This document shows, piece after piece, positions 267-62,974 of a DNA stretch of 64,000 bases. The position numbers and the translations under genes were made by a program. The notes under the pieces were generated by a model, which saw only the letters and a program-made list of their open reading frames with translations, was not told the origin of the DNA and did no database searches. The first letter of the stretch is position 1, and each line of letters begins with the position of its first letter. The stretch spans positions 62,001-126,000 of the IMG/VR virus record IMGVR_UViG_3300030202_003189; one strand, given 5' to 3'.

Positions 267-2084
267 ATGGCCAAGAGAAATTTAACAATATATCAGAAAT
301 TACAACAAGTATTTGGTGCGGGGGCAATGAGAAGGACCCCACCAAGTTATAATGTTGACCCAAGTAAAATACTACTTAAAACACCATCAAAGTCTGAGTT
401 CGATCAAGAAAAACTACAGGCTCAACAACAAGCTTTTCTAAAAGGACAATGGAATAAAGTAGATAGTGAGTTATATAACCAAGCCATTTATTATGAAACA
501 ACTAGACTAGCATCATTTTATGATTTTGAGTCGATGGAATTTACACCAGAAATTGCCGCAGCTTTAGATATATACGCAGAAGAAAGTTGTACTCCAGATG
601 AAACAGGAACTTTACTTACTGTAGAATCAGACTCTAGTAGAATAAAAGATATACTAGATAATCTCTTCCATAAGGTTCTTGACCTACACGCGGTATTACC
701 AGCTTGGACAAGAAATACCTGTAAGTATGGGGATAATTTTGTTTACCTAAAAATTGACCCAAAACAAGGTATTATTGGGGCATCACAATTACCAAACATT
801 GAGATAGAGAGAAAGGATGAAAGTAGTTATCTTACCTCACGAAAATCCGGGACCTATGGAGTTGAGGGGGAGGAAGAAAAAGATAAGAACATTAAGTTTG
901 AATGGAGAAATAAATCAATCTCTTTTAACGCTTGGGAAATTGCTCATTTTAGGTTACTAGGAGATGATAGAAGACTACCATATGGAACTTCTTTATTAGA
1001 AAAAGTAAGACGAATCTGGAAACAATTATTATTATCGGAAGATGCTATGATGATATACAGGGTAACTAGAGCGCCGGAAAGAAGAGTCTTTAAGATAAAT
1101 GTTGGTAATATTGATGATCAAGATGTACAAGCATATGTGAATAAGATTGCTAATAATTTCAAAAGAAGTCATGCTATAGATCAAAATACAGGTCAGGCAG
1201 ATTTAAGATATAACGCATTAGCGGTTGACCAAGACTTTTTTGTTCCAGTTCGTAATGACGGAGCTGCTAATCCAATTGAGACACTACCAGGGGCTGGTAA
1301 TTTAGATCAGATTGCTGATATCGAGTACATCCAAAAGAAAATGTTATCAGCTTTAAGAATCCCAAAACCTTTTTTAGGGTTTGAAGAACCAGCGGGAGAA
1401 GGAAAGAATTTAGCACTTCAGGATATTCGTTTTGCTCGAACAATCAACAGAGTTCAACAATCAATGATTCAAGAACTTAATAAGATTGCTATAATACATC
1501 TTTATATTTTAGGTTTTGAGGATGAGTTGGAGAACTTTACCCTAAGATTGCAGAATCCATCAACACAAGCCGAAATGTTAAAAATAGAACAGTTCCAATC
1601 AAAAGTGGCGTTGTATAGAGATTCGGTGTCTGATGCAGGTAATGGTTTTGGTGCAACTTCTATGACTTGGGCAAAGAAAAATATATTAGGTTTTAGTGAT
1701 GATGATATTCTTCTAGATTTAGAAAGACAAAGAATGGAAAAAGCCGCAGCGGCAGAGATGGAGAACACTGCGGAAGTGATAAAAAGTACTGGTATTTTTG
1801 ATGAGGTAGATAAACTATATGGACAGGCGGCGGAAGGTGAAGATGTACCAGCAGAAGATAGCGGTGACGAACCACCAACTCCAGGAGAAGCAACTGGTGA
1901 TGTACCCCCACCGGCAGACGTAGATATGGATGATGATATGATGATGGAAAAGAAGAGTAGTTATGAAAATCTAGTTGATATTGTAAATCTTGATACAAAA
2001 AAGAAAGGTAAAAATACAAAAAGTAATTTAATTAAAGAAGACCTAGAGTACCTAAAAGATAATTTGGACAAACTTTTAGAATAG
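267..2084 (+). CDS. gp20: portal protein, T4 gp20-like
   Basis: PEIAAALDIYAEE, YGTSLLE, LLSEDAMMIYRVTRAPERRVFKINVGN, DFFVP, IETLPG, DIEYIQKKMLSALRIP: typical gp20 motifs. Confidence 0.93.
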   Translation: MAKRNLTIYQKLQQVFGAGAMRRTPPSYNVDPSKILLKTPSKSEFDQEKLQAQQQAFLKGQWNKVDSELYNQAIYYETTRLASFYDFESMEFTPEIAAALDIYAEESCTPDETGTLLTVESDSSRIKDILDNLFHKVLDLHAVLPAWTRNTCKYGDNFVYLKIDPKQGIIGASQLPNIEIERKDESSYLTSRKSGTYGVEGEEEKDKNIKFEWRNKSISFNAWEIAHFRLLGDDRRLPYGTSLLEKVRRIWKQLLLSEDAMMIYRVTRAPERRVFKINVGNIDDQDVQAYVNKIANNFKRSHAIDQNTGQADLRYNALAVDQDFFVPVRNDGAANPIETLPGAGNLDQIADIEYIQKKMLSALRIPKPFLGFEEPAGEGKNLALQDIRFARTINRVQQSMIQELNKIAIIHLYILGFEDELENFTLRLQNPSTQAEMLKIEQFQSKVALYRDSVSDAGNGFGATSMTWAKKNILGFSDDDILLDLERQRMEKAAAAEMENTAEVIKSTGIFDEVDKLYGQAAEGEDVPAEDSGDEPPTPGEATGDVPPPADVDMDDDMMMEKKSSYENLVDIVNLDTKKKGKNTKSNLIKEDLEYLKDNLDKLLE

Positions 2085-2112: not shown

Positions 2113-2868
2113 ATGAAAAATTTCGGTGATTTACTAGATTCACTATACTCTAAAGCGTCGTCACAATTTGCTAATGATAAAAAAAATTGTAGCAAAATAC
2201 TCAAAGAGTGTATAAACACAATAAAAACAGATAAAATCTTATCTGATCAATTCATAATTTTTAATAATCTTAAAACTTCAGTTGTTGACGAAAAACAAGT
2301 TAACGATTATATAAATGAAAATGTCAATTCAATAAAGTTACATAGAACCAAGGATATTATTAATTCTAATCATAAATTAGAAAGATTATGTAATAAGTTA
2401 GGGACAAAAATTAAGAAAGATGAGTTAAATGAGTCGATATCAAATCTATGTTTCTTAATGAATACGGCTAAGAATGTTAATTCACTACACAAATCAAAGA
2501 ATATAATAAAGGAAAATTTATTGACTAATGAAAAAACAAAGAAAAGTGACACACCGTCAATTCCTTTGGCTTTAATGAGTAAACTTGTTAGTAAAAAGTA
2601 CAATAAAAAATATAGTGATTTAAGTGAATCAGATAAAAAATTACTTAAAACAATTCTTGAAAATAACGAGGGAGACGAAAAACTTTTCCAATCCTATAAA
2701 GAAAACGCAACAAAATTATTATCAAATAAGATAGTTGAGAATGATGACCCTACCTTACATACAAATTTGAAAAAAAGTTATAAGAAGGTATCTAGTATGG
2801 AGTATATAAGTGAGAGTTTAATAAACGATGTGAGTAAATTACATTATTTAATAGAAGGTTTAGGATAG
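2113..2868 (+). CDS. hypothetical helical protein (possible head assembly factor)
   Basis: 251-aa ORF directly after portal; Lys/Asn-rich; no recognisable motif. Confidence 0.6.
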   Translation: MKNFGDLLDSLYSKASSQFANDKKNCSKILKECINTIKTDKILSDQFIIFNNLKTSVVDEKQVNDYINENVNSIKLHRTKDIINSNHKLERLCNKLGTKIKKDELNESISNLCFLMNTAKNVNSLHKSKNIIKENLLTNEKTKKSDTPSIPLALMSKLVSKKYNKKYSDLSESDKKLLKTILENNEGDEKLFQSYKENATKLLSNKIVENDDPTLHTNLKKSYKKVSSMEYISESLINDVSKLHYLIEGLG

Positions 2869-3441: not shown

Positions 3442-5079
3442 ATGGGTAGACAAAAATATAATAAAAGAAATCATATAGAAAAATCCAATATAATTTTGGA
3501 AAATAATTACTCTAAGAGTAAAGGGTTATTAACTGAACAACAAGCAACACTGGCTTGGTCATGTAATGGGTCACAACTAGTTAGTCATAGTTTTGATGCT
3601 AACATGGTACAACTTGGATTTACTGGTTATTGGGCCTCTGCATCGGGAGCGTTGCCTGTAATATTTGAGGCACAACTACCAACCGGTCCCGGAACTCCTA
3701 CAATGATAAACCAAGGTTTATATAATCAACCAGACGTTACATTAAGTTTTACGGGACCACAACCATCATTAGTGACTAACAACCAAGCATGGTTTCCAGA
3801 TGATTATCCTGGTTTTATGGCACCAGGCGTTATGCAGGGTATTGTAGGAGATATATGTGCTAGTGGTGGAACAATAACAAATGATACAGATTGTTACGAT
3901 TGTGTAAACGGAGTACCAACTGTAGTAGAAATTATAGGACCTAATTCATCTTGGTGTCAAAATGTACCAGGTGGTCCACAATGTGGAACTGATTGTACCT
4001 TAATACCTATGAATGCTGTAGGTGGAGTACTTCAATTCCCTCTAGTAAACGACCCTAACCTAGCTTGTGGACAAAACCAAGCAGATTGGTGGTGTCCAAC
4101 AGGAGTAGCAGGACCAGGTCCTTGTATACAATCACCAACAAACCCTCAACCAGGAATGGCAACAGGACCTTATCCAGATCAACAAACTTGTGACGCTCAA
4201 TGTGGCGGAATCGGACAAGTATCTGGTTGTTTAGATCCAAATTTACCAAATTATGACCCTAATGCAACTTTAGACTGTTCAGGAAATCCACAACCAGCGG
4301 CTGGATACGGAGATACTAATTGTTGTGGTATGCCACCACCGCCACCACCAAGTGGAGGTTGTATGGAATTATGGGTAACCAAATGTGCAGGAACTAGTCC
4401 TGGACACCAAATTGGACAATCAAATCTTCATTTCCCATGTCCAATGGTAGATGGATCATTTGCAGACCCAACTCTTGTTGGACAAGAAGTTGGTATAGAC
4501 CCATCATCAGGACAAGGAGGAGATGACGTATATACGGTAGATGTGGTTAACCCAAACCCTAATTACCCGTCACAATATACACCAAATTCTTATCTAACAA
4601 CTAATGTTAGTTGTACAACAAATCCAGCTAATGCTTCATGTGATTTTTCATGGACTAGTTCTTGTGCACAACAACACTTAAATACAGGAGGACAAAATTC
4701 TTGGCAGAATTTCCTTGACCTACGAGAAACCGGTTTTAATGGGGCGGGATGTCAACATCTACAAAATGTAGTAAATTGGACAACTGACCAGTTAAATTCA
4801 GGAGTTACTGGAGCAGGTGCACCATTAACCCCGAATCAAATAGCTAGAAAAACAGAACAGAGAGACTGGGCACAATGTCAAGCGGCGGAGTGTGGATGTA
4901 GTACACTTAATCTCCCAGCATTAACAGGAGGACCAACACCACCTCCACCAACAGATCCAGATTTAATCGATCCTGAAGTACCTACAGATAAACCAAAAAA
5001 ACCAAAACCAGGTGAAGAAGGAGGATTAAATGAACAGTTTACTAGAATGAAAGAACTGTGGAAGTACAATAAACTATAA
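3442..5079 (+). CDS. Cys/Pro/Gly-rich protein, putative internal head or virion protein
   Basis: Basic N-terminus ending LLTEQ, many Cys, a GCLDPNLPNYDPNATLDC module, C-terminal LNEQFTRMKELWKY. Confidence 0.7.
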   Translation: MGRQKYNKRNHIEKSNIILENNYSKSKGLLTEQQATLAWSCNGSQLVSHSFDANMVQLGFTGYWASASGALPVIFEAQLPTGPGTPTMINQGLYNQPDVTLSFTGPQPSLVTNNQAWFPDDYPGFMAPGVMQGIVGDICASGGTITNDTDCYDCVNGVPTVVEIIGPNSSWCQNVPGGPQCGTDCTLIPMNAVGGVLQFPLVNDPNLACGQNQADWWCPTGVAGPGPCIQSPTNPQPGMATGPYPDQQTCDAQCGGIGQVSGCLDPNLPNYDPNATLDCSGNPQPAAGYGDTNCCGMPPPPPPSGGCMELWVTKCAGTSPGHQIGQSNLHFPCPMVDGSFADPTLVGQEVGIDPSSGQGGDDVYTVDVVNPNPNYPSQYTPNSYLTTNVSCTTNPANASCDFSWTSSCAQQHLNTGGQNSWQNFLDLRETGFNGAGCQHLQNVVNWTTDQLNSGVTGAGAPLTPNQIARKTEQRDWAQCQAAECGCSTLNLPALTGGPTPPPPTDPDLIDPEVPTDKPKKPKPGEEGGLNEQFTRMKELWKYNKL

Positions 5080-5086
5080 ACATTAG

Positions 5087-5110
5087 AAAAACCCCAATCG
5101 GGGTTTTTTT
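5087..5110 (+). terminator. intrinsic terminator
   Basis: AAAAACCCC-AATC-GGGGTTTTTTT stem-loop with U tract. Confidence 0.85.
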
Positions 5111-5170
5111 ATTCAATAATATTTCATAATATTAAGTATCAATAACACTTAGAGAAAAAGAATATGAAAA

Positions 5171-5602
5171 ATGAAATTAGGAAAAGAATTATCTTTGAAA
5201 ACGGAAAAACCATTCAAAATATATATTGGAACGGTCAATAATAAAGAACCAAGAACCTTGTACATGGTTCTATCTAGCTGGGTTGAACCTCTACAAGATT
5301 TAGAAAACTACCAACCACACTTAAATAAAATTACAAAAAACATTAAACGGTTCCTAAGTGAAGTGGTACCTAAAGAAAGTTTCAATAAAGAAAAGATAAT
5401 TGTAGACTTCGACTTACGTTCATCAGGTATAACAAAAAATAAAAAGTCTTTTATGTCATGTGAGGTGACACTTTTTCAAAAGGAACTACGAAAGATAAAC
5501 TCCCCATCAGTTATTATGGAACTTCAATGGTTATCAACTAAATTAATCGGAGAGGTTTTCGAGCCGGATATTGGATTTAGGTACCACTTAAATAAAAAAT
5601 AA
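5171..5602 (+). CDS. hypothetical protein
   Basis: 143-aa ORF bracketed by two terminators. Confidence 0.65.
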   Translation: MKLGKELSLKTEKPFKIYIGTVNNKEPRTLYMVLSSWVEPLQDLENYQPHLNKITKNIKRFLSEVVPKESFNKEKIIVDFDLRSSGITKNKKSFMSCEVTLFQKELRKINSPSVIMELQWLSTKLIGEVFEPDIGFRYHLNKK

Positions 5603-5614
5603 TAAATAACTAAC

Positions 5615-5645
5615 ATAAAACCCACTCTGGTGGGTTTTATTTTTT
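5615..5645 (+). terminator. intrinsic terminator
   Basis: ATAAAACCCAC-TCTG-GTGGGTTTTAT followed by a T run. Confidence 0.85.
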
Positions 5646-5653
5646 CCCCCTTA

Positions 5654-5678
5654 TATTTATAATAAAAACAATATTTAT
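5654..5678 (+). promoter_or_regulatory. two putative late promoter elements (5654-5661, 5672-5678)
   Basis: TATTTATA and TATTTAT between the terminator and the protease ATG. Confidence 0.55.
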
Positions 5679-5682
5679 TAAT

Positions 5683-6372
5683 ATGGAACTTAAATTATTA
5701 AAAGAAGGTGAGGTAGGTTATGGGTTATTAGTAGAAAAGGATTCTGGTTATATTTCACCACAAACTACAGAGAATAAAAAAATTATAAAAGAAATGAATG
5801 AGATGGGTACTAGTTATGGACCTATCCAAATGGTTGCTGTCCTACAGAAATGTGGTGTACAAAATAGAAACGGAAGAGTTTATCCAGAAAACATTCTAAG
5901 AAAAGAAGTAGATAAACATCAGGAAGTAATACAGAATGGTAGGGCGATTTCAGAACTAAATCATCCTGACTCTTCTATTATTGATTTGGAGAGAACGTCA
6001 CATAAGTTGGACGAAACTTGGTGGGATGGTAATACCTTAATGGGAAAACTAACTTTGATAACTTCACCAGCTTACGAATCTAATGGTACTGCAACTACAC
6101 CAGGAGATTTGGCCGCTAATTTACTAAGACATGGAGTACAGTTAGGTATTTCATCTAGAGGGGTAGGGTCCTTATCAAATGTAGGAGGACAGAATATGGT
6201 ACAAGATGATTTTGAATTAATTTGTTTTGATTTGGTCTCGTCTCCGTCAACACCAGGGGCCTACCTATTCAATCAGGTTGAAGAAGCGAAACCTTATGTG
6301 GAATCAAGAAGACCACAAAAAATAATGGAGTCAAAATTAGACGAAACAATTAAAAATTTCTTAAAAGATTAA
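5683..6372 (+). CDS. gp21: prohead protease, T4 gp21-like
   Basis: NRNGRVYP, SELNHP, SH, LGISSRGVGS (catalytic Ser motif), FDLVSSPSTPGAY. Confidence 0.93.
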   Translation: MELKLLKEGEVGYGLLVEKDSGYISPQTTENKKIIKEMNEMGTSYGPIQMVAVLQKCGVQNRNGRVYPENILRKEVDKHQEVIQNGRAISELNHPDSSIIDLERTSHKLDETWWDGNTLMGKLTLITSPAYESNGTATTPGDLAANLLRHGVQLGISSRGVGSLSNVGGQNMVQDDFELICFDLVSSPSTPGAYLFNQVEEAKPYVESRRPQKIMESKLDETIKNFLKD

Positions 6373-6376
6373 AATT

Positions 6377-7588
6377 ATGAGTAATAGAATTAGAAAAGCA
6401 AAATATGACAATATGGTAAAATTAAATAGAACTCTATTGTCAGAAGAGAACCTAAACATCAATAATGAGCCAGATGTAGAAGAATATATAGGTTTAGAAG
6501 AAGAGAATCATGATTATGGAGGAACACCTCCATATACAAAAAAGACTAAAGGTAAAAAACTAAATGAAGGATGTGGTTGTGGAGAATCAAAAGAAACAAG
6601 TGAAAAGTCATATATGGCGGCATCACAGTTACATAGTATTTCTAATAAAGCAGAAGACATGTATAATAAATTAGAAAAAGATGAGGTCTTAGATGATTGG
6701 GTTGAAAGTCACTTAGCCAAAATTGATCAAATGATGGATAGTGTTAGTGATTCATTTAATCATCACGAATCAAAAGATGCTGGTGATATGGGTACAGGTG
6801 GATGTCCTCCAGGTCATCATTGGTGTGCGGCGTCTGATTCATGTAGATCAGATGATGCCCCACAAATCGAACCTATGACTTTAATGGGAGCAGATGTGAT
6901 TAACTTAGAAGAATCAATTAGAAGAAAATTAAACTTAAGTGAACAAACAAATCCATTCGCTGGTGGTGGTTCAGGACCAAATTGGGCTGCGGCTGAAGCT
7001 GCTTGGACTGATTGGAACGCTTCAAATCAAACAGGAGCCCCTGAACCGGATGCAACTTTTTTATCTAATATGGATGGTAAAGGTTGTGGATTTTACCAAA
7101 AACGTTTAGACGCTCAAGTAAATTCTTTTGTTAACAATTTTGGTGGTAGTTTTGGTGCTGGTTCAAACGCTTCAAATGCACAACATCAAGGTCAAAACCC
7201 AGCTTGGCAGAGTCAAAAATATGCTAGAATAATGTGGTTATCAGACGCGGTATATAATTGTAACAATTCTAATACTACAGGAGGTTCTTTAACTACTACT
7301 TCTAGTGCTCAAGAATCTAATGCAAATTGTTTCTATACTTTCCTTAATGACCCAGCAAATGACCCATTACTTACTAACGCAGTATGTCCTAATGGTAATC
7401 AAGCAATAAAACCAAATAATATGGAACAAACTAAATTTAGGTGGCAATCAATATCCGACTGTCAAATGTTAAATACCAAAATAGCAAAAATGTTAAATTT
7501 GGCACAAACCACAACAGGGTGTGAACAGGTTAGGAAATCTGCAAAACATGAGTATTTGGTTGAATTAAGACAAAGTTGTTGTAATTAA
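6377..7588 (+). CDS. multi-segment Cys-rich putative internal head protein
   Basis: LLSEE, LNEG and LNLSEQ protease-type sites; acidic N-half; two copies of a Cys-bracketed helical domain in the C-half. Confidence 0.7.
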   Translation: MSNRIRKAKYDNMVKLNRTLLSEENLNINNEPDVEEYIGLEEENHDYGGTPPYTKKTKGKKLNEGCGCGESKETSEKSYMAASQLHSISNKAEDMYNKLEKDEVLDDWVESHLAKIDQMMDSVSDSFNHHESKDAGDMGTGGCPPGHHWCAASDSCRSDDAPQIEPMTLMGADVINLEESIRRKLNLSEQTNPFAGGGSGPNWAAAEAAWTDWNASNQTGAPEPDATFLSNMDGKGCGFYQKRLDAQVNSFVNNFGGSFGAGSNASNAQHQGQNPAWQSQKYARIMWLSDAVYNCNNSNTTGGSLTTTSSAQESNANCFYTFLNDPANDPLLTNAVCPNGNQAIKPNNMEQTKFRWQSISDCQMLNTKIAKMLNLAQTTTGCEQVRKSAKHEYLVELRQSCCN

Positions 7589-7589
7589 T

Positions 7590-8366
7590 ATGAATTTAAT
7601 AGAAAATATAAAAAAAGAATTAAGATTATTAACTGAGCAAAGCTCTTGGTGGACAACTATGACCTCATGGGCAACAGCAGCAGATGCAGTTAATACTTCA
7701 AATGCACCAGCCACTTCAGATCCAAATACTCCTGCAGCCCCAGGTGTAACAGGTTCATACTCTTCAAATGGTGTGTGTTTTGATTCAGCAGCTAGTACGT
7801 GTCAATTAAATAATAGTTTATCTCACACTCAGAAATGGAATCAATATGTTGCCTGTTTAGATCCTTATGCAACTCCTTGTACTTTAGGTACGAAAGTACA
7901 ACAGGGGACTCCCGGATATAATTCTCAATACGCAGGACAACAGTTATGTATTACACATACCGCTCCCTCCAATGTGACAGGGGGATATTCGCCATATGAA
8001 ATACTTGAACTTAATTCTCCTGATTGTGCAATTGCATCAACTCCATGTGACACAACACCATCTTCACCATGTGCACAACAGTGGTTCCAAAACCCTAACG
8101 CGACATGGGCATCAACTTGGATAACTAATAGAGATTGTTCAAATTACAATTGGCCATCAATTAATTTAGAACAACAAGCAATGGATATAATGAATGACCC
8201 AACAACTCCAAACCCACAAAGTGGTCCTTTTAATAATTGGAATGACATATGGTCAGCAGGTAACGTCGCATGGCCAAATACTACAGGAGCTCCTAAAACC
8301 CAATTCATTGCAAAAATGGCGAAAGCTAAATATGCGCAATGTCAAATACAAGCATGTAACTGTTAA
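7590..8366 (+). CDS. Cys-rich putative internal head protein
   Basis: Leader MNLIENIKKELRLLTEQ; C-terminus AKMAKAKYAQCQIQACNC resembles ARKTEQRDWAQCQAAECGC of the 3442 ORF. Confidence 0.7.
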   Translation: MNLIENIKKELRLLTEQSSWWTTMTSWATAADAVNTSNAPATSDPNTPAAPGVTGSYSSNGVCFDSAASTCQLNNSLSHTQKWNQYVACLDPYATPCTLGTKVQQGTPGYNSQYAGQQLCITHTAPSNVTGGYSPYEILELNSPDCAIASTPCDTTPSSPCAQQWFQNPNATWASTWITNRDCSNYNWPSINLEQQAMDIMNDPTTPNPQSGPFNNWNDIWSAGNVAWPNTTGAPKTQFIAKMAKAKYAQCQIQACNC

Positions 8367-8369
8367 ACT

Positions 8370-8795
8370 ATGAATTTAAGAAAAAACATAAAAAAACAAT
8401 TACGTCTATTAAAAGAAACGGATGATAGACCAGACAATTGGAGAGAACTACCAGGATATAATCCTGATGCTTTTTATCCGATAACGAATTATGGTGATGA
8501 TGATTTAAGGTTAGAACCTGAGGATGACGATACTTCTTCTAGACTACCAGCTCATTTCTATGAGGATGATTATGATTTAGATGAGGGGGACTTAGATGAA
8601 ATTTTTGACGAAACTCAAAGAGGAGACAGGGTTAGATATTTCGTAGACGTTTATTATGATACTATGTTACCAAGTTCTGGAAATGCAGAAAAAGATAAAG
8701 TTTTGGCGGAAAAAATTGCTAGAGCTGATCTTCGTAGTCTTAAAAATCGAGAGTATATTATAGGACCTGTAGAATTAAGAGGATACTATAATTAA
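8370..8795 (+). CDS. acidic putative internal head protein
   Basis: Leader MNLRKNIKKQLRLLKE, nearly the same as the upstream gene; unrelated acidic body. Confidence 0.65.
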   Translation: MNLRKNIKKQLRLLKETDDRPDNWRELPGYNPDAFYPITNYGDDDLRLEPEDDDTSSRLPAHFYEDDYDLDEGDLDEIFDETQRGDRVRYFVDVYYDTMLPSSGNAEKDKVLAEKIARADLRSLKNREYIIGPVELRGYYN

Positions 8796-8846
8796 TATTT
8801 ACTGACAAAATTTCATGTGAACACGTCTTTTTTATGTTCTCAGGTA

Positions 8847-8891
8847 TATTTATTAAAAAACTCCCTACGGAGTTCTTTACGCTTTTGCGTA
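8847..8891 (+). promoter_or_regulatory. putative late promoter (8847-8853) plus two 5'-leader hairpins
   Basis: TATTTAT, then AACTCC-CTAC-GGAGTT (8859-8874) and TACGC-TTTT-GCGTA (8878-8891). Confidence 0.55.
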
Positions 8892-8924: not shown

Positions 8925-10334
8925 ATGGCAGAAAAATCTTTAGTAGAACAAGCTCTTCTTGAAGCGAAAACAATCGAGGAATCAGTTAAGAGGAGTGCAA
9001 AAGAAATACTACCTTCAGTTTTGAAGAAAGAAATTAACGACCTAGTAAAAGAATCCATCAACGAAGTTGATGAGATTGATTTAGATTCAGACACACTTGA
9101 CATTACTGACGATGAAATGGACATGGATATGGAACCAATAAGTGGTGACATGGATATGGGTATGGATTCAATTGAATTAGACTTGACAGCGTCATCAGAT
9201 GATGAAGTTATGAAAGTATTCAAAAAAATGGGCCCAGAAGACGAAATCGAAGTTGTAAAGACTGGCGATGGCGTAACGCTTACAGATGGTAATGAAGAGT
9301 ATGAGATAAAAAACGTTTCAGAAGGAAAAAAGAACGAACCAATTTATGAAATTGAATTGGACGACGACATGATGGAAATGGAAGACATGGATGAAATGGA
9401 AGACATGGACGAAATGGAAGACGACATGATGGAAGGACACCATGGAATGAAAAAGGGAGACCAATCAAAAACTCGTAGTGATTATAAAAACTACAAAGGG
9501 ACTGATAAAGGATACCACGGTAAAACTGGAGCTTCACATGGTGATCAAGGACATCCTGATGACTTTATGACTGAATACGATGACATGGATGAAATGTATG
9601 GTGGTAAAAAAGGCGATGAGTCTAAAAGTCACAGAGATTACATGGATGAAATGCATAGTAAAAAACGTCATATGGAAATGCACGACGAACAAATGTATGA
9701 AATTGAACTTGATGAGGAGGACGATTTAGAAGAAGGAACAGCTAGAAGTCACGCAAAAGGACAAAGAGCATCTTCTGGTGAAAGAAAAGGCTCCCCAAAA
9801 CCAAGTGCAATTCCAAATAAAGCTCTTTACAAAAAGAACATAAAGGAATCAAGAAAACCACAAAGAACAATTTCACCAAGAGTTATTAAGGAAAACAAAG
9901 CGTTAAGAGGTACGTTGGCTAAGTATGGTGACGAAGTTAAGACTCTAAAAGGAAAGAATGAAGAATATAGAAAAGCTCTTTCTTTATTTAGAGAAAAACT
10001 AAACGAAGTTGCAGTATTTAATTCAAATTTAGCTTACACAACAAAATTGTTTACTGATCACTCAACAACAAAGAAAGAAAAGTTAAATATACTTTCTAGA
10101 TTTGATGAGGTTAATTCATTAAAAGAATCTAAGTCTCTTTACAAACAAATAAATTCTGAAGTTGGTACAGGTAAATCATCTGCAAGACTTAAAGAAGTTA
10201 TTTCTCGTAAAGGTGGAACTAAGGTTATAACAGAAAGTAATAATAGTGCTAATAATAGTACTATAAGAGAAAATAAAGTTTACCAAGATCCTCAAATGAA
10301 AAGAATGATGGATCTAATGAGTAAAATAAAATAA
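8925..10334 (+). CDS. prohead core/scaffold protein (gp22 position)
   Basis: Immediately upstream of MCP; acidic low-complexity centre, coiled-coil C-half, many I/L-x-E sites. Confidence 0.8.
   Translation: MAEKSLVEQALLEAKTIEESVKRSAKEILPSVLKKEINDLVKESINEVDEIDLDSDTLDITDDEMDMDMEPISGDMDMGMDSIELDLTASSDDEVMKVFKKMGPEDEIEVVKTGDGVTLTDGNEEYEIKNVSEGKKNEPIYEIELDDDMMEMEDMDEMEDMDEMEDDMMEGHHGMKKGDQSKTRSDYKNYKGTDKGYHGKTGASHGDQGHPDDFMTEYDDMDEMYGGKKGDESKSHRDYMDEMHSKKRHMEMHDEQMYEIELDEEDDLEEGTARSHAKGQRASSGERKGSPKPSAIPNKALYKKNIKESRKPQRTISPRVIKENKALRGTLAKYGDEVKTLKGKNEEYRKALSLFREKLNEVAVFNSNLAYTTKLFTDHSTTKKEKLNILSRFDEVNSLKESKSLYKQINSEVGTGKSSARLKEVISRKGGTKVITESNNSANNSTIRENKVYQDPQMKRMMDLMSKIK
9375..9422 (+). repeat. 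in-frame 18-bp tandem repeat (EMEDMD x2.7)
   Basis: GAAATGGAAGACATGGAT / GAAATGGAAGACATGGAC / GAAATGGAAGAC. Confidence 0.85.
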
Positions 10335-10359: not shown

Positions 10360-12297
10360 ATGGGACAATTATTAAATTCAGGACAAGTTGGAAACATTGG
10401 AACTAATTCAATGAAACTTATCCGTGAGGATGTAATCAATAAATGGGACAAACTAGGTTTCCTAGATGGTCTTAATGGTTACTCTAAAGACAACGTTGCT
10501 CAATTATTTGAGAACCAAGCTTCTTATCTAATTAACGAGCAAACAACATCAACTGACTCAGGTTCATTCGAAACAGTTGTATTCCCAATCGTAAGGAGAG
10601 TATTCTCTAAACTTTTGGCTAACGATATTGTTTCTGTACAAGCACTTAACTTACCAATTGGTAAATTATTCTACTTTGTACCGGAAATATCTACTAACAG
10701 ACCAGGATTCAACGCTGGTGGATTTGACGCGTCAACTCCTTCATCAGTTGATTTATATGACCAATTCTATGAAGGTAGAACTGGAGATCCAGAAGGAGGA
10801 TTATTTGATGCTTCAAGAGGACTTGCAACTGTAAATATCATTAGACCTTCAGGAGCTGGAGCTGCTGCTAACGGTAACATCGGTTTATACGACTCTTCAG
10901 GAGCGTTCTCTGCAGCAACTGAGGATATGGATACTAGAGATCACAGATACATCGTATTAAAAATCGATTCTGCTACTTTAGTTACTACTGGAACTATGGT
11001 AGGTGCTGATGGTCAATTGGCTGATACTGAAGCTTTCTTAGCTTCATTAAACATCTACTTAACAGGATCTACAACTTCTGCTTCTGCAGCTGATTTAGCG
11101 GCATCTATCGGAACTACTTATGGTATGCCATGTAACGTTTCTGATTCAGTAACTGCAAACACTTACTTAAGAGCTACTGGTATTGTTGGAAATAATGGAG
11201 ATGGTATATTTACACAAGTTGGTAATACTACTGGTGTACTTTCAGGAGGTACTAGACTTAAGTACAGAATGATTACACAAAAGTATGGTCAAGGTATTGT
11301 TGATTCTGCTGGTGATTTATATGTTGAGGTAGACTTCGGTTGTCCAGCATGTCCAGACTGTCAAACTGTTGCTGGTAGAGGTTATGGTAATCCAGGTACT
11401 GCGGCAGGTGTTGGGGCTACTGTACCAAATACTTTTATTACTGCTGATGGTGCGGCTGAGGCTTTAGGTGCGGCTAATAACGGAGCACAAAAACATGGTT
11501 TAGCTGTTGAGTTTAAGAACTACGCAACTTTAGAATTAGAAGACAACATGGCTGAGGTAACTTTCAGATTGGATTCTGTAACTGTAGCGGTAACAGAAAG
11601 AAAATTAAGAGCTACTTGGTCTCCGGAACTTGCACAAGACGTTTCTGCATTCCATAACATTGATGCTGAGGCTGAATTAACAGCTTTATTATCAGAACAA
11701 GTTGCTGCTGAGATTGATAGAGAAATCTTGAAAGACCTTAGAAATGGTGCGGCTTGGTCATTAAGATGGGACGCTAACGGATGGAAAAGATCTAATAACG
11801 CTCAAGGTTACGCAGCTTATACTCAAAAAGATTGGAATCAAACGTTAATTACTACAATTAACCAATTATCTGCACAAATACATAAATCAACACTTAGAGG
11901 TGGTGCTAACTGGATCGTATGTTCAGCTGAAGCTTCTGCTATCTTTGATGATTTAGAGTATTTCCACGTTTCTAACGCGGCTCCAGATCAAGATTCTTAT
12001 AACATGGGTATTGAGAAAGTTGGTTCTTTATCAGGTAGATATACTGTATATAGAGACCCTTACTTCCCAGCTGGTTCAGTTTTAGTTGGACATAAAGGAA
12101 AATCATTACTAGATACTGGTTATGTTTACGCTCCTTATGTACCGTTACAACTTACACCAACTATGTATAACCCTTTCAATTTTGCTCCTATCAAAGGAAT
12201 CATGACTAGATACGCTAAGAAAATGGTCAACAACAGATTCTATGGTAAGATTACTATTGATGGAATACAAACGTTCTCTGTTAATGAGTTAAGATAA
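10360..12297 (+). CDS. gp23: major capsid protein, T4 gp23-like, with large insertion
   Basis: AQLFENQ, PIVRRVF..LLANDIVSVQ, RKLRATWSPELAQD..AFHNIDAEAEL, EIDREI, YAPYVPL, GIMTRYA. Confidence 0.96.
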   Translation: MGQLLNSGQVGNIGTNSMKLIREDVINKWDKLGFLDGLNGYSKDNVAQLFENQASYLINEQTTSTDSGSFETVVFPIVRRVFSKLLANDIVSVQALNLPIGKLFYFVPEISTNRPGFNAGGFDASTPSSVDLYDQFYEGRTGDPEGGLFDASRGLATVNIIRPSGAGAAANGNIGLYDSSGAFSAATEDMDTRDHRYIVLKIDSATLVTTGTMVGADGQLADTEAFLASLNIYLTGSTTSASAADLAASIGTTYGMPCNVSDSVTANTYLRATGIVGNNGDGIFTQVGNTTGVLSGGTRLKYRMITQKYGQGIVDSAGDLYVEVDFGCPACPDCQTVAGRGYGNPGTAAGVGATVPNTFITADGAAEALGAANNGAQKHGLAVEFKNYATLELEDNMAEVTFRLDSVTVAVTERKLRATWSPELAQDVSAFHNIDAEAELTALLSEQVAAEIDREILKDLRNGAAWSLRWDANGWKRSNNAQGYAAYTQKDWNQTLITTINQLSAQIHKSTLRGGANWIVCSAEASAIFDDLEYFHVSNAAPDQDSYNMGIEKVGSLSGRYTVYRDPYFPAGSVLVGHKGKSLLDTGYVYAPYVPLQLTPTMYNPFNFAPIKGIMTRYAKKMVNNRFYGKITIDGIQTFSVNELR

Positions 12298-12320: not shown

Positions 12321-12348
12321 AAAAACCCCTCTTCGGAGGGGTTTTTTT
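12321..12348. terminator. bidirectional intrinsic terminator between MCP and cysK
   Basis: AAAAACCCCTC-TTCG-GAGGGGTTTTTTT with C(UUCG)G tetraloop; A and T tracts on both sides. Confidence 0.92.
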
Positions 12349-12349
12349 G

Positions 12350-13261
12350 TTATAAACAACTTAGATATCTATTTCCTCTATCACAGAGTATGGTAATTCC
12401 CTCTCTTTCGTTATTGTCTCTTAACCATTGAAAGGTTGCCATTACATTCGCACCTCCACTAATACCAATAAACAAACCATAGTTTTTAGCTAGGTGTTTA
12501 GTAATACTTTTCGCACATTCGGTCTTGATGACTCGTATGTCATCAACTAAATCTAAATCGACTAAGAACTTACTACCATCACCAATACCTTGTATCCCAT
12601 GTAATCCAACTTCCCCTCCACTCATTACTGGAGATTCTGCTGGCTCCACGGCAACAATTTTTATATCTTCCCATTTTTCTTTTAGAAATTTACGAGTTCC
12701 CATTAAGGTACCACCAGTACCTGTCCCAGCAACAAAAACTGCAGGAGAATCATTTCTCCTATAACTTCCCCTCTCTTTAGGTAAAGACCAATCCTCATAG
12801 ATTTCTGGTCCAGTAGTTTGATAATGAGCCTCAATGTTTAAGGGATTATGAAATTGATTACAATTAAACCAACCATTTCGTTTACAAAGATTATCTCTAA
12901 GTTCGATAGCCCCATCAAAATCTCCTTCATCTACTTCTATTAATGTCGCCCCATAATACTTAAACATTTTTTTACGTTCCTCGGACATATTTGATGGCAT
13001 AATAATTACCATTTTATAACCTCTTTCTGACGCTAACATAGCAAACGCAATGCCACTATTACCACTAGTTGCTTCACATATCGTACTGTTTTTTTGGATA
13101 ACACCTTTTTGTTGGGCATCATTAAGTATAAAAGATGCCATACGGTCTTTTACAGAGCCAGAAGGGTTCATAAATTCAGCTTTACCCCAAACGGTAAGGT
13201 TACCTAAAGTAATAGGGATTAACGGTGTTTTACCAATGTGGTCAGATAATTTCATATTCAT
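12350..13261 (-). CDS. cysK: cysteine synthase / O-acetylserine sulfhydrylase family (PLP-dependent)
   Basis: IGKTPLI, NPSGSVKDR (PLP lysine), EATSGNSG, GTGTGGT, HGIQGIG, GISGGAN, CDRGNRYLS. Confidence 0.9.
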   Translation of the reverse strand: MNMKLSDHIGKTPLIPITLGNLTVWGKAEFMNPSGSVKDRMASFILNDAQQKGVIQKNSTICEATSGNSGIAFAMLASERGYKMVIIMPSNMSEERKKMFKYYGATLIEVDEGDFDGAIELRDNLCKRNGWFNCNQFHNPLNIEAHYQTTGPEIYEDWSLPKERGSYRRNDSPAVFVAGTGTGGTLMGTRKFLKEKWEDIKIVAVEPAESPVMSGGEVGLHGIQGIGDGSKFLVDLDLVDDIRVIKTECAKSITKHLAKNYGLFIGISGGANVMATFQWLRDNNEREGITILCDRGNRYLSCL

Positions 13262-62400: not shown

Positions 62401-62974
62401 AAATAACGTAAGAATATATATTCCACCTACAGCTAATGTTGTTAGAAATTTAGCATTAACTGATAATGTATCATTCCCGTGGTTCGCAACAGCTGGTTAT
62501 AATAGAGGTAAACTGGATGTTGATAGGGCACAAACAAAACTAACTCAGATTAACAGAGACGACCTTTATGAGGCAAGAATAAACCCAATAGCCACATTTA
62601 ATGGTGCGGGGGTTATTATATGGGGAAATAAAACTTTACAAACAACACAATCAGCTTTAGATAGAATTAATGTAAGACGACTTATGTTAGACCTTAAAAC
62701 TAAAGTTAAAGATATAGGGTTACAATTATTATTTGAACAGAACGACGCTATTGTAAGACAACAATTCTTATCTTTAATTAATCCAGTTCTAGAAGAAGTA
62801 AGGGCAAATAGAGGATTAACAGATTTCAGGGTAGAACTAAATTCAGATGTTAACGAACTAGACACCAACTCTATGACAGGTAAAATATTTGTTAAACCAA
62901 CTAGAACACTTGAATTTATAGAAGTTGAGTTTAACATAACACCATCGAGTACATCATTCACTGACTTAACATAA
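59492..62974 (+). CDS. gp18: tail sheath protein 2, T4 gp18-like paralogue
   Basis: Same N- and C-terminal sheath motifs as sheath 1, with a longer distal insertion. Confidence 0.92.
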   Translation: MADQSPLSPGVYVSERELSFNAPSIGATTLATVGETLKGPAQQPIFIEDYNEYKTYFGGLDTTVFSGSTRLKYGQQYIAKNWLAESNSMWAVRSLGYSGYDAGTAWNISLNYVPTTNNVFRSFGGGGTDGHYNGLTQRELGGTGIPYMAPDGTISAMTLYKPTQYSFPNNAGATSVQPGMYSGGTWGYNADADGGSAINGTQYTNAGGGANFGANYQSAIELAVIFSATTYGGAGKLVVTGSTGGNSFAGPSSEAAGLPWVSELTTTSYPLCLLSATTLVITTNSSVGGADPTAFTAGGSEGFESPRITTGSNATTFPTIQWKPAISVHDNGVNASNVSPANIIHAGMGSRDVNPLGYPVTGHTFQLNWRYGNYIGAHSGGTTGWTAQTTGTVYTWSAATQEMVVGTLRSRAKYAGNTYSTNTAYNGGAWGVTDYQSPSFGNKSECDGTVTTCPEKPFRTINTTNYKEDFYISGYTNGASVNSQFLYKVSLDPNSQCYITKVLGTKKHNNSRHLWVEDIYPNTLLNLASSAVTFSNINLNKADTYRNYTETWQPLGALEGPTTPWIVSELMGSTLHKLFRVILIPDGNDANELVKISIQDVDVFTKTFTLTVREFNDSDASQRILEGYTNCSMNPTSQNYIGKKIGTENGEYPVRSRYIMLEIDENAPINALPSGFQGIVVRSYSGSTHSNEVYQDPPAQTEIANDSGWYGNESPKPFYNLTYNTTSDDIKKTYLGWSTKKGIDQNYFNYRGLETLTTTAPYKCGANGTLWTGRTKGFHFDKRVSGLTTSDVLQYEVGAYSFYTSGSTGTLVGDSGNYYQNKDYLKFTVIPYGGFDGWDEYRITRTNADTYIIGGTDYGTFWYNQSFTTSTCQVTDYYAYYDAMRKLANPEATPSSVFTTPGIDYTNNLTLVNRAKEMIENDKGDSIYIVTSDNPRNQTVDEAVDNLENAALNSSYMATYWPWVRYNDTENNVRIYIPPTANVVRNLALTDNVSFPWFATAGYNRGKLDVDRAQTKLTQINRDDLYEARINPIATFNGAGVIIWGNKTLQTTQSALDRINVRRLMLDLKTKVKDIGLQLLFEQNDAIVRQQFLSLINPVLEEVRANRGLTDFRVELNSDVNELDTNSMTGKIFVKPTRTLEFIEVEFNITPSSTSFTDLT

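What the first reader, a model, noticed from the sequence alone, without database searches (positions are those of the whole stretch)
3442..8795. Shared cleavable leader on unrelated proteins: candidate capsid-targeting code
Seen: MNLIENIKKELRLLTE (7590) and MNLRKNIKKQLRLLKE (8370) are almost the same leader on unrelated bodies. An internal copy INLEESIRRKLNLSE (about 6899-6943) splits the 6377 ORF like a polyprotein, and 3442 has KGLLTE. The 3442 C-terminus LNEQFTRMKELWKY resembles the scaffold end QMKRMMDLMSKIK. The MCP (YLINE), protease (LLKE) and scaffold carry the same I/L-x-E pattern. Known: T4 gp21 cleaves after I/L-x-E and internal proteins use an N-terminal capsid targeting sequence. 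Inference: a portable amphipathic tag loads diverse cargo into the head.
Basis: partly seen in the sequence, partly recalled or inferred. Interest (0 to 1): 0.7.

Follow-up and report, generated by a model that had tools for sequence, protein, structure and literature searches.

The report
Portable cleavable tags on phage proteins
A marine T4-like phage puts short, interchangeable helical tags ending in a protease-site motif on dozens of otherwise unrelated proteins, most likely to load them into the virus head as phage T4 does with its internal proteins. The same undescribed tags occur on thousands of metagenomic proteins.

Summary
ORFs 7590 and 8370 share a 16-residue leader (12/16 identical) with no detectable likeness after it. 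ORF 6377 carries an internal copy. ORF 3442 ends in a copy of the scaffold protein's tail. All lie in a T4-type head operon (portal, S77 protease, scaffold, gp23 capsid protein).

- **Genome-wide:** about 37 proteins of this 231-kb phage carry N-terminal tags ending in [LI][LI]xE, 4.5 times the density in protein bodies.
- **Tag classes:** I found three main ones. Different leaders occur on the same protein family, and tags sit at N-terminal, internal or C-terminal positions.
- **Spread:** the commonest tag (MKKxIKLTESDLxRIVKRVIxE) matches 7,995 protein clusters in public metagenomes. It has no Pfam family, and I found no paper describing it.
- **Scaffold mimicry:** one class copies the scaffold's C-terminal tail and changes along with it in a distant cultured phage.

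Best reading: an analogue of T4's capsid targeting sequence, removed by the L/I-x-E-specific prohead protease. Packaging and cleavage are inferred, not shown.

Corrections: 3442 and 7590 share a C-terminal domain, so their bodies are not unrelated. The protease's conserved site is LLVE (residues 15-18), not LLKE.

Verdict: a new variant of a known kind.

The parts
5653..5679 (+). Two copies of the upstream motif [GA]TATTTAT[AT] (5653-5661 and 5671-5679) just before the protease gene; a candidate late promoter element.
   Evidence: This 8-mer family is 12-13 times enriched in the 80 nt upstream of genes. It precedes the terminase, portal, protease, adaptor, sheath, tube and baseplate wedge genes, and 13 of 37 tagged genes against 30 of 202 others (Fisher p = 0.005). 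Coordinates.
5683..6372 (+). Prohead protease of the T4 gp21 type (Peptidase_S77), 229 aa. The candidate self-processing site LLVE (residues 15-18) is conserved in the clade. His94 (in ELNHP) and Ser158 (in SSRG) are present.
   Evidence: Pfam PF03420, E 3.8e-25. phrog_207. T4 gp21 structure 5JBL, E 1.4e-15. N-terminal alignment. Residue positions.
6377..7588 (+). 403-aa ORF with an N-terminal leader ending in LLSE (residues 20-23) and an internal leader copy INLEESIRRKLNLSE (residues 175-189, nt 6899-6943). It looks like two tagged units fused.
   Evidence: There are no homologues in 80 related loci.
7590..8366 (+). 258-aa ORF. It has a type A leader at residues 1-16 (nt 7590-7637), a disordered Cys/Trp/Asn-rich middle, and a conserved helical C-terminal domain (residues about 148-258) that ends in CQIQACNC.
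   Evidence: The 58 homologues carry four interchangeable leader types, and the junction is E|Q in 40 of 43. In the AlphaFold model residues 3-14 form a helix, 16-147 have pLDDT below 50, and 148-258 have pLDDT 86-96.
8370..8795 (+). 141-aa acidic ORF with a type A leader at residues 1-16 (nt 8370-8417). Its body shows no detectable likeness to that of 7590.
   Evidence: No Pfam or PHROG match.
3442..5079 (+). 545-aa Cys-rich ORF. It has an N-terminal extension ending in LLTE (residues 29-32, nt 3526-3537), a domain related to the C-terminal domain of 7590 (residues 388-486), and a scaffold-tail-like C-terminus LNE-QFTRMKELWKYNKL (residues 527-545, nt 5020-5076).
8925..10334 (+). Acidic scaffold protein, 469 aa. 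It has 14 [LI]xE sites (6.4 +/- 2.1 expected from its composition), an internal motif DDEVMKVFKKMGP (nt 9198-9236) and a C-terminal tail VYQDPQMKRMMDLMSKIK (nt 10278-10331).
   Evidence: Conserved in 78 of 80 related loci. Tail nearly invariant in the clade and preceded by NLIE. Site enrichment. Coordinates.
10360..12297 (+). Major capsid protein of the gp23 type, 645 aa. It has an N-terminal propeptide of about 60 residues that ends in the invariant LINE (nt 10528-10539).
   Evidence: Pfam PF07068, E 2.9e-71. T4 gp23 structures, E about 1e-24. L57, I58, N59 and E60 are invariant in 41 sequences.
2113..2868 (+). 251-aa ORF between the portal and protease genes. It has 9 [LI]xE sites (3.5 +/- 1.6 expected) and is a candidate prohead core protein that is cut into pieces.
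   Evidence: The upstream late-type motif is at 2089-2097. No family match.
267..2084 (+). Portal protein of the T4 gp20 type. It marks the start of the head module.
   Evidence: Pfam PF07230, E 3.6e-75.
12328..12341 (+). Terminator-like hairpin followed by a T run, after the capsid gene. No such hairpin lies between 5683 and 12297. The protease, the three tagged ORFs, the scaffold and the capsid genes therefore look like one transcription unit.

Best explanation
The leaders are removable head-incorporation tags. [quoted passage not shown]

Proposed sequence of events:
1. A short amphipathic helix at a protein's end binds a component of the assembling prohead core, so the protein is enclosed when the gp23-type shell closes.
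2. The S77 prohead protease then cuts after the Glu of the [LI]-x-E motifs that flank the helix. This frees the mature protein inside the head.
3. The same protease cuts the scaffold to pieces and removes the capsid propeptide at LINE.

There are at least three tag classes:
- A: MNLxxNIKKxLRLLxE.
- B: MKKxIKLTESDLxRIVKRVIxE. It has a site on each side of the helix, so it could be removed from an N-terminal, internal or C-terminal position.
- C: ExxxRMxxLMG. This is a copy of the scaffold's own C-terminal tail, so it presumably uses the scaffold's binding site.

Shown here: the tags, their portability, their positions, their spread, and the gene context.

Inferred: binding to the prohead core, cleavage, and the fate of the cargo (presumably ejected with the DNA).
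For: Head context:
- The window holds a T4-type head module: portal, S77 protease with His and Ser in place, scaffold and gp23.
- ORFs 6377, 7590 and 8370 lie between the protease and scaffold genes, with no terminator-like hairpin up to the end of the capsid gene.
- In 58 related loci this gap usually holds one 70-aa ORF. In L023 it holds a protein with a type B tag.

Protease logic:
- T4 gp21 cuts after L/I-X-E, and 10-residue propeptides target the internal proteins to the core (PMC9026906; PMC3012670).
- T4 IPII and IPIII both start MKTYQEFIAE on different bodies.
- In this clade the capsid propeptide ends in an invariant LINE, the protease N-terminus carries a conserved GILIE-type site, and the scaffold tail is preceded by NLIE.
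- The scaffold is enriched in [LI]xE beyond what its composition predicts (14 against 6.4 +/- 2.1).

Tags:
- [LI][LI]xE is 4.5 times enriched at residues 5-30 (39 proteins against 15.0 +/- 3.6). The same holds in 80 related loci (282 against 114 +/- 9).
- In the type B alignment both Glu residues are invariant or nearly so.
- Tagged N-termini are more amphipathic than the others (0.61 against 0.50, p = 3e-5).

Portability:
- The bodies of 3442, 6377, 7590 and 8370 have no homologues in 80 related loci, while the flanking head genes do.
- The 7590 family carries four leader types, and the junction is E|Q in 40 of 43.
- A widespread DHH-like protein always begins its conserved body right after [LI][LI]xE, with leaders of 7 to 22 residues.
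- There are 10-13 type B tags in each related large genome, and 7,995 protein clusters match at E <= 1e-3.

Scaffold mimicry:
- The scaffold tail motif recurs at the C-terminus of 3442 and of two 1000-aa proteins, and at five N-termini.
- In the cultured Flavobacterium phage immuto the scaffold ends in SRWQKLAGIIK and two proteins start MKKQILSEQF(K/R)RMQxLAGIITE. The motif therefore changes together with the scaffold tail.

Timing:
- Tagged genes share the upstream motif of the structural genes.
Against: - There is no direct evidence that any tagged protein is in the virion or is cut.
- Two proteins with a type B tag end in a Peptidase_S74 intramolecular chaperone domain, which is typical of trimeric fibres and spikes.
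- Several large Cys-rich tagged proteins share repeats with a protein that has a signal peptide and a T9SS sorting domain, and with proteins of the tail-fibre region. Both are more natural outside a head.
- Most tagged proteins are acidic, unlike the basic T4 internal proteins.
- The tagged set is 17% of all coded residues, which is a lot for head contents.
- [LI]xE is not depleted in the cargo bodies once composition is allowed for (observed/expected 1.1, the same as in other proteins).
- The tags have no sequence likeness to the T4 CTS.
Confidence: 0.6

Rival explanations
1. The tags are docking helices that fix diverse proteins to a common site on the outside of the virion (head fibres, collar or baseplate appendages). 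They are not internal cargo, and they need not be cut off.
For: - Two proteins with a type B tag carry the C-terminal Peptidase_S74 chaperone domain of fibres and spikes. Through that domain they match PHROGs named virion structural protein, tail fiber and baseplate.
- The Cys-rich repeats of tagged proteins recur in proteins of the tail-fibre region and in a T9SS-sorted protein.
- Conserved N-terminal anchors on variable fibre proteins are common in phages (general knowledge).
Against: - A 7- to 22-residue helix is far shorter than known fibre anchors.
- The tags sit on enzymes and small proteins (the DHH-like family; GNAT and PG-binding domains).
- Both flanking Glu residues are invariant in an L/I-x-E context.
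- One tag class copies the tail of the scaffold, which works inside the prohead.
- Three tagged genes lie between the protease and scaffold genes.
Confidence: 0.17
2. The tags act in the infected cell, not in the virion. For instance they could be recognition tags for the phage's own chaperone or Clp-type machinery, or generic oligomerisation helices of early or late accessory proteins.
For: - Judged by eye only, the genome seems to encode a ClpC-like ATPase, two ClpP-like proteins, a DnaK and a DnaJ (N-termini listed; not tested).
- Tagged genes often sit in long arrays of small ORFans, like hyperplastic accessory regions.
Against: - Tagged genes share the upstream motif of the structural genes and lie inside the head operon.
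- The motif logic matches the prohead protease and the scaffold tail.
- Nothing ties the tags to Clp recognition.
Confidence: 0.12
3. The shared leaders have no function as protein. They would be a by-product of recombination between gene starts, or of selection on the 5' coding region for translation initiation in an AT-rich genome.
For: - N-termini here are Lys-rich (11.1% against 6.9%).
- [LI][LI]xK also shows a small N-terminal excess (1.8 times).
Against: - Identical residues in the two window leaders use different codons.
- The excess is specific to Glu at the last position.
- The tags also occur at internal and C-terminal positions.
- The type B tag is conserved as protein over 7,995 clusters at 50% identity.
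- Leaders of different kinds all keep the same E|Q junction in the 7590 family.
Confidence: 0.04

Closest known systems
Capsid targeting sequences (CTS) of phage T4 internal proteins IPI, IPII, IPIII and Alt, removed by the gp21 prohead protease
   Same: - A short N-terminal propeptide, shared by proteins with different mature parts, ends in hydrophobic-x-Glu.
- It occurs in a phage with a gp20 portal, gp21 S77 protease, gp22-like scaffold and gp23 capsid protein.
- The cargo genes are hypervariable between relatives.
- T4 Alt is also processed at its C-terminus (PMC9026906), which parallels the C-terminal tags here.
   Different: - There is no sequence likeness to MKTYQEFIAE.
- This genome has about 37 tagged genes, against a handful in T4.
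- There are several tag classes that replace each other on one protein family.
- Type B has a candidate cleavage site on both sides and occurs at N-terminal, internal and C-terminal positions.
- One class copies the scaffold tail.
- The cargo is mostly acidic and often Cys-rich rather than small and basic.
- Nothing here has been tested by experiment.
Propeptides of head and inner-body proteins of giant phages (phiKZ, 201phi2-1, SPN3US), cut by a gp21-like protease
   Same: - Many head proteins are processed after Glu in a three-residue motif.
- There are multiple sites within a propeptide.
- Paralogues keep identical N-termini although their bodies have diverged (SPN3US gp53/gp54, PMC5694885).
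   Different: - Those propeptides are mostly 100 residues or longer, and the motif is S/A/G-x-E or A-x-E.
- They belong to a different lineage with no recognised scaffold protein.
- Here the tags are 7-25 residues long and the motif is L/I-x-E.
Cargo-loading peptides of encapsulins, and the C-terminal coat-binding helix of phage scaffold proteins such as that of P22 (general knowledge, not tested here)
   Same: A short terminal peptide directs varied cargo to the inner face of an HK97-fold shell. The type C tag looks like the scaffold's own terminal helix.
   Different: Encapsulin peptides are not removed by a protease and are unrelated in sequence. That the scaffold tail of this phage binds the capsid protein is only assumed, and the complex prediction gave no answer.

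Membership tests
T4-type head maturation system (gp20 portal, gp21 S77 protease, gp23 capsid) | Portal, S77 protease and gp23-family capsid protein are encoded together. | tested here: met
   Pfam Portal_T4 (3.6e-75), Peptidase_S77 (3.8e-25) and Gp23 (2.9e-71). PDB matches to T4 gp21 and gp23.
T4-type head maturation system (gp20 portal, gp21 S77 protease, gp23 capsid) | The catalytic His and Ser of the protease are present. | tested here: met
   His94 lies in ELNHP and Ser158 in SSRG. Both align with the corresponding positions of 5JBL; the crystallised chain has Ala at the His position. That these are the catalytic residues rests on knowledge of the family.
T4-type head maturation system (gp20 portal, gp21 S77 protease, gp23 capsid) | The capsid protein has an N-terminal propeptide that ends in L/I-x-E. 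| tested here: met
   LINE at residues 57-60 is invariant in 41 sequences. It lies 12 residues before the segment that aligns with the N-terminal part of mature T4 gp23. Cleavage itself was not tested.
T4 capsid targeting sequence (CTS) proteins | The same short N-terminal leader sits on proteins with different mature parts. | tested here: met
   7590 against 8370. Type B tags on many bodies. For comparison, T4 IPII and IPIII.
T4 capsid targeting sequence (CTS) proteins | The leader ends in the L/I-x-E site of the prohead protease. | tested here: met
   LLTE, LLKE and LLSE in the window ORFs. Glu is invariant in the type B alignment. The junction is E|Q in 40 of 43 members of the 7590 family.
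T4 capsid targeting sequence (CTS) proteins | Sequence likeness to the T4 CTS (MKTYQEFIAE). | tested here: not met
   The T4 leaders were read from NC_000866. Beyond the terminal hydrophobic-x-E they do not resemble tag types A, B or C.
T4 capsid targeting sequence (CTS) proteins | The leader is needed for, and sufficient for, packaging into the prohead core. | not testable with these tools
   This needs tag-reporter fusions in an infected host.
T4 capsid targeting sequence (CTS) proteins | The leader is absent from the mature virion protein. | not testable with these tools
   This needs virion proteomics or N-terminal sequencing. I found no cultured phage with type A or B tags in the phage collection.
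T4 capsid targeting sequence (CTS) proteins | The cargo is small, basic and DNA-associated. | tested here: not met
   Most tagged proteins have a net negative charge, and sizes run from 86 to 1375 aa.
Scaffold-tail-like cargo-loading peptide (proposed here) | The cargo motif matches the scaffold's C-terminal tail and changes with it between lineages. | tested here: met
   In the window clade the scaffold has QFLRMKDLM(S/G)K and the cargo has RMxxLMG or RMKELW. In immuto the scaffold and two cargo proteins all have LAGII. The comparison covers only two lineages.
Scaffold-tail-like cargo-loading peptide (proposed here) | The tail peptide binds the capsid protein or another prohead component. | tested here: inconclusive
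   The complex prediction of the capsid protein with the last 60 residues of the scaffold gave no answer.
Any curated family for the tag itself (Pfam, PHROGs) | A profile match that covers the tag. | tested here: not met
   None of 70 tagged proteins has a Pfam match over the tag. The PHROG matches lie in C-terminal domains.

The most novel reading that the evidence does not exclude
Marine T4-like phages of Bacteroidota use a small set of interchangeable address peptides that can be cleaved from either side, one of them a copy of the scaffold's own tail. With these they pack a large and fast-changing part of their proteome into the head for delivery with the DNA. That part includes enzymes, fusions with peptidoglycan hydrolases and sigma-factor domains, and hypervariable Cys-rich proteins. 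If so, the tag is a sequence-only marker that picks out injected effector proteins in thousands of uncultured phages.
Probability: 0.35. Interest if true: 0.8.

Novelty: new variant of a known kind. Interest (0 to 1): 0.62.

Why it matters
Proteins that a phage carries in its head and injects with its DNA act first in an infection. In T4 they block host defences. In uncultured phages they cannot be recognised, because they are fast-evolving ORFans.

If these tags mark head cargo, they give a simple way to list candidate injected proteins across a very large group of marine phages, since 7,995 clusters match one tag class alone. They would also show that cargo can enter by imitating the scaffold tail. 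And they would offer short natural peptides for loading foreign proteins into capsids, as the T4 CTS is used today.

If the tags turn out to be external docking helices instead, they would still define a large, undescribed modular system of virion decoration.

Tried and rejected
- **Complex prediction.** Capsid protein (alignment of 41) with the last 60 residues of the scaffold (alignment of 41): no answer, score 0.00. This is not evidence either way.
- **Depletion of [LI]xE in cargo bodies,** as a sign of exposure to the protease: none once composition is controlled (observed/expected 1.1 in tagged and untagged proteins).
- **Searches of the phage collection.** Megablast of 3442-8795, tblastn of 7590, and tblastn of a 30-residue type B tag at E <= 10 all found no match.
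- **Type B profile in three other phage records.** No matches in immuto or Mel-JY01, and two weak ones in the uncultured 484-kb record LR756508.
- **Pfam and PHROGs** on 2113, 3442, 5171, 6377, 7590, 8370 and the scaffold: nothing.
- **Pfam on 18 other tagged or related proteins:** mostly nothing.
- **ESM Atlas look-alikes** of 3442 and 7590: no usable hit.
- **Fold search** with the AlphaFold model of 7590. The best PDB Z-score was 5.0, among generic helical bundles, and AlphaFold DB gave E > 0.6. The C-terminal domain therefore stays unassigned.
- **Word-based search** with the leader region of a tagged protein found only close orthologues.
- **Metagenomic contigs that carry type B tags** (L091, L093-L095). 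They hold arrays of tagged ORFans but no recognisable head genes, and they share no homologues with this genome. So I could not test whether the tags occur together with S77 and gp23 genes.
- **Literature searches** found no description of these tags.
- **Rejected idea.** I first read the extra domains of the DHH-like family as N-terminal. They are C-terminal, and the N-terminus always carries the short leader.

Full report
**What the window is.**
The window is bases 62001-126000 of a single 231,285-bp phage contig with 34% G+C. Its first 12 kb hold a T4-type head module on the + strand:
- portal (267-2084, Pfam Portal_T4);
- four ORFs without family matches (2113, 2870, 3137, 3442);
- a conserved 143-aa ORF (5171);
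- an S77 prohead protease (5683-6372);
- three ORFs without family matches (6377, 7590, 8370);
- an acidic scaffold protein (8925-10334);
- a gp23-family capsid protein (10360-12297).

The protease matches the T4 gp21 structure 5JBL (E 1.4e-15) and has His94 and Ser158 at the aligned positions. The capsid protein matches the T4 gp23 structures.

The nearest capsid proteins in the phage collection are only 41-44% identical: Microcystis phage Mel-JY01 and Flavobacterium phage immuto, with Rhodothermus phage RM378 further off at 36%. IMG/VR holds at least 598 loci with capsid proteins about 52-56% identical. One protein of the genome has a signal peptide and a T9SS sorting domain, which points to a Bacteroidota host. 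Close relatives come from marine metagenomes.

**Check of the observation.**
The leaders of 7590 and 8370 are 12/16 identical, with E 1.6e-7 among the 239 N-termini of the genome. At the DNA level they are 38/48 identical, and four identical residues use different codons, so the likeness is selected at the protein level.

Against a profile of 52 members of the 7590 family:
- 8370 matches only with its first 18 residues;
- 6377 matches only with residues 175-193, its internal copy, and that match is to the leader;
- 3442 matches with residues 388-486, to the family's C-terminal domain.

So 8370 and 7590 really have different bodies, while 3442 and 7590 do not.

A stand-alone 119-aa paralogue (L002:12284-12643) aligns with the second half of 6377, with its own leader on the internal copy. 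The KGLLTEQQATLAWSC of 3442 aligns with the very N-terminus of another paralogue.

**The motif is not a chance feature.**
In my ORF set of 239 proteins, [LI][LI]xE occurs at 7.2 per 1000 residues at positions 5-30 and at 1.6 per 1000 beyond residue 60. It is found in 39 proteins, against 15.0 +/- 3.6 after shuffling each N-terminus. Patterns that end in D, K or Q show little or no excess.

The same holds in 890 distinct proteins of 80 related loci (282 against 114 +/- 9). It holds more weakly in the cultured phage immuto (21 against 10.8 +/- 3.1).

Tagged N-termini are more amphipathic than the rest. In the AlphaFold model of 7590, residues 3-14 form a helix, followed by about 130 residues of low confidence and then a confident helical C-terminal domain.

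**Tag classes.**
Clustering the N-termini gives several groups.
- Type A (MNLxxNIKKxLRLLxE) is on 7590, 8370 and three further proteins.
- Type B (MKKxIKLTESDLxRIVKRVIxE) is on nine or more proteins. In an alignment of 19 copies from this genome and its relatives the first Glu is invariant and the second is at least 90% conserved, and each sits in an L/I/V-x-E context.
- Type C (ExxxRMxxLMG) is at five N-termini, in each case after an L-x-E. It is also at the C-termini of 3442 and of two proteins of about 1000 aa.

Further leaders end in LLNE or LLTE.

In relatives a strict type A/B pattern is N-terminal in 45 cases, internal in 13 and C-terminal in 6. A tag with a candidate site on each side of its helix could be cut off from any of these positions. 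That would explain why both Glu residues are kept.

**Portability.**
The four window ORFs have no homologues in 80 related loci, although the portal, 5171, protease, scaffold and capsid genes are found in 41-79 of them. In those loci the gap between the protease and the scaffold mostly holds one 70-aa ORF, and in L023 it holds a different protein with a type B tag.

One small protein family (body starting RYMFFSNLEQ) has a type A leader in some relatives and a type B leader in others.

The 58 homologues of 7590 share the C-terminal domain that ends FIAKMAKAKYSQCQKQACNC. They carry four different leaders: type A 20, a long two-part leader 19, a third kind 9, type B 1. The junction is Glu-Gln in 40 of 43.

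A DHH-like protein (L003:12576-13979) has more than 4000 homologues. Its conserved body always starts right after [LI][LI]xE, with leaders from 7 residues (MKKIIKE) to the full type B tag. Many members carry extra C-terminal peptidoglycan-binding, M23 peptidase, GH19, SET or sigma-70 domains.

The type B profile finds 5-13 copies in each of four related records, 10 and 13 in the two large ones. In a library of 1.84 billion representatives it finds 7,995 clusters at E <= 1e-3, mostly at residue 1 and often with a second copy 100-140 residues further on.

No Pfam family covers the tag, and I found no paper describing it.

**Links to the head.**
1. Position. Three tagged genes lie between the protease and scaffold genes. 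No terminator-like hairpin lies between 5683 and the end of the capsid gene, whereas hairpins follow 3442, 5171 and the capsid gene.
2. Protease logic. According to the literature, T4 gp21 cuts after L/I-X-E. Ten-residue propeptides target the internal proteins to the core. Alt is processed at both ends, and gp21 itself has such a site near its N-terminus (PMC9026906; PMC3012670; PMC5694885). In this clade the capsid propeptide ends in an invariant LINE, the protease has a conserved G(I/L)L(I/V)E at residues 15-18, and the scaffold tail is preceded by NLIE. The scaffold and ORF 2113 are enriched in [LI]xE beyond what their composition predicts.
3. Scaffold mimicry. The last 20 residues of the scaffold are nearly invariant in 78 loci, and the type C tag is a copy of them. 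In immuto the scaffold, which is annotated there as a DNA polymerase phi-like protein, ends IISE-VSEQVSRWQKLAGIIK, and two proteins begin MKKQILSE-QF(K/R)RMQxLAGIITE. All three have LAGII, where the window clade has LMG or LMS. The Mel-JY01 scaffold ends ILNE-SNNVVERMKKLAGIVK.
4. Timing. The motif [GA]TATTTAT[AT], 4-45 nt before the start codon, precedes the terminase, portal, protease, adaptor, sheath, tube and baseplate wedge genes. It also precedes 13 of 37 tagged genes, against 30 of 202 others. Most of the remaining tagged genes follow a motif-bearing gene closely on the same strand.

**What speaks against the head reading, or is missing.**
- Nothing shows packaging or cleavage.
- Two proteins with a type B tag end in a Peptidase_S74 chaperone domain, as fibres and spikes do.
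- Some large Cys-rich tagged proteins share repeats with a T9SS-sorted protein and with proteins of the tail-fibre region.
- The cargo is mostly acidic, and the tagged set makes up 17% of all coded residues.
- [LI]xE is not depleted in cargo bodies.
- The one complex prediction gave no answer.
- The bodies of the window ORFs remain without assigned function.

**Comparison with what is known.**
The closest system is the T4 CTS. IPII and IPIII both start MKTYQEFIAE and then differ, which is exactly the pattern of 7590 and 8370.

The tags here are not members of that sequence family, but they most likely work in the same way. Five things are new:
- the number of tagged genes;
- the several classes that replace each other;
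- the two-sided architecture and the use of all three positions;
- the copy of the scaffold tail;
- the very wide spread in metagenomes.

The long propeptides of phiKZ-like phages, and the cargo-loading peptides of encapsulins, are more distant parallels.

**Verdict.**
The finding is a new variant of a known kind, of clear interest to phage biologists, and a few standard experiments can test it.

Noticed in passing
L003:12576-13979 (G000:C1:48576-49979): A DHH-like protein with a type B tag belongs to a very widespread, well conserved family (more than 4000 hits, about 60-65% identical). Many members carry extra C-terminal domains: PG_binding_1 with Peptidase_M23, GH19, SET, or sigma-70 regions. 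The Pfam DHH match itself is weak (E 0.0025, below the cut-off).
   Followed up: partly
window 2113-2868: This ORF between the portal and protease genes has 9 [LI]xE sites, against 3.5 +/- 1.6 expected from its composition, like the scaffold. It may be a core protein that is cut into pieces, in the position where T4 has gp67 and gp68.
   Followed up: partly
whole genome; in the window for example 240-248, 2089-2097, 5653-5661, 5671-5679, 8846-8854: The upstream motif [GA]TATTTAT[AT] is 12-13 times enriched just before start codons, mainly of structural genes. It is a candidate late promoter element. TATTTATA is the reverse complement of the T4 late promoter TATAAATA (recalled from memory).
   Followed up: partly
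L096:7707-8948 (MW353176.1 125582-126823): The gene of Flavobacterium phage immuto annotated as 'DNA polymerase phi-like protein' is the acidic head scaffold. It lies between the protease and capsid genes and has the scaffold-type C-terminal tail.
   Followed up: partly
immuto genome (L102-L109 joined): 1803-2318, 117587-118588, 118588-118887: Three immuto proteins share another leader (MENFDLKKFLVENxLTxNSKLINE), two of them just upstream of the terminase gene. One of them is annotated as cob(I)alamin adenosyltransferase.
   Followed up: no
G000:C1: 51507-53960 (-), 5424-6086 (+), 227944-228543 (+), 222889-224754 (+), 210797-211726 (+): By eye, the genome seems to encode a ClpC-like ATPase, two ClpP-like proteins (paralogues), a DnaK and a DnaJ. 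None was tested against a family library.
   Followed up: no
L002:15021-18809: A 1262-aa protein has a Bacteroidota-type signal peptide and a T9SS C-terminal sorting domain (Por_Secre_tail, E 8e-12). It shares Cys-rich repeats with tagged proteins and with proteins of the tail-fibre region. Several other ORFs also start with such signal peptides.
   Followed up: partly
window 56654-59470 and 59492-62974: Two adjacent tail sheath paralogues (49% identical over 750 residues; the first matches phrog_23, tail sheath).
   Followed up: partly
window 12350-13261 (-): The ORF directly after the capsid gene, on the opposite strand, looks by eye like a PLP-dependent cysteine synthase (an auxiliary metabolic gene). 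It was not tested.
   Followed up: no
G000:C1:211738-211950 and related loci (for example L023:7658-7873): In most relatives a conserved 70-aa ORF (MDEKYFVAKITTD...) fills the gap between the protease and scaffold genes. This genome has a look-alike far away (window coordinate 149738), and the three tagged ORFs take its place. The likeness was judged by eye.
   Followed up: no
L002:4356-5219: A run of 10 N, the only gap in the contig, lies inside a gene with a type B tag. The record is therefore probably a scaffolded metagenomic assembly.
   Followed up: no
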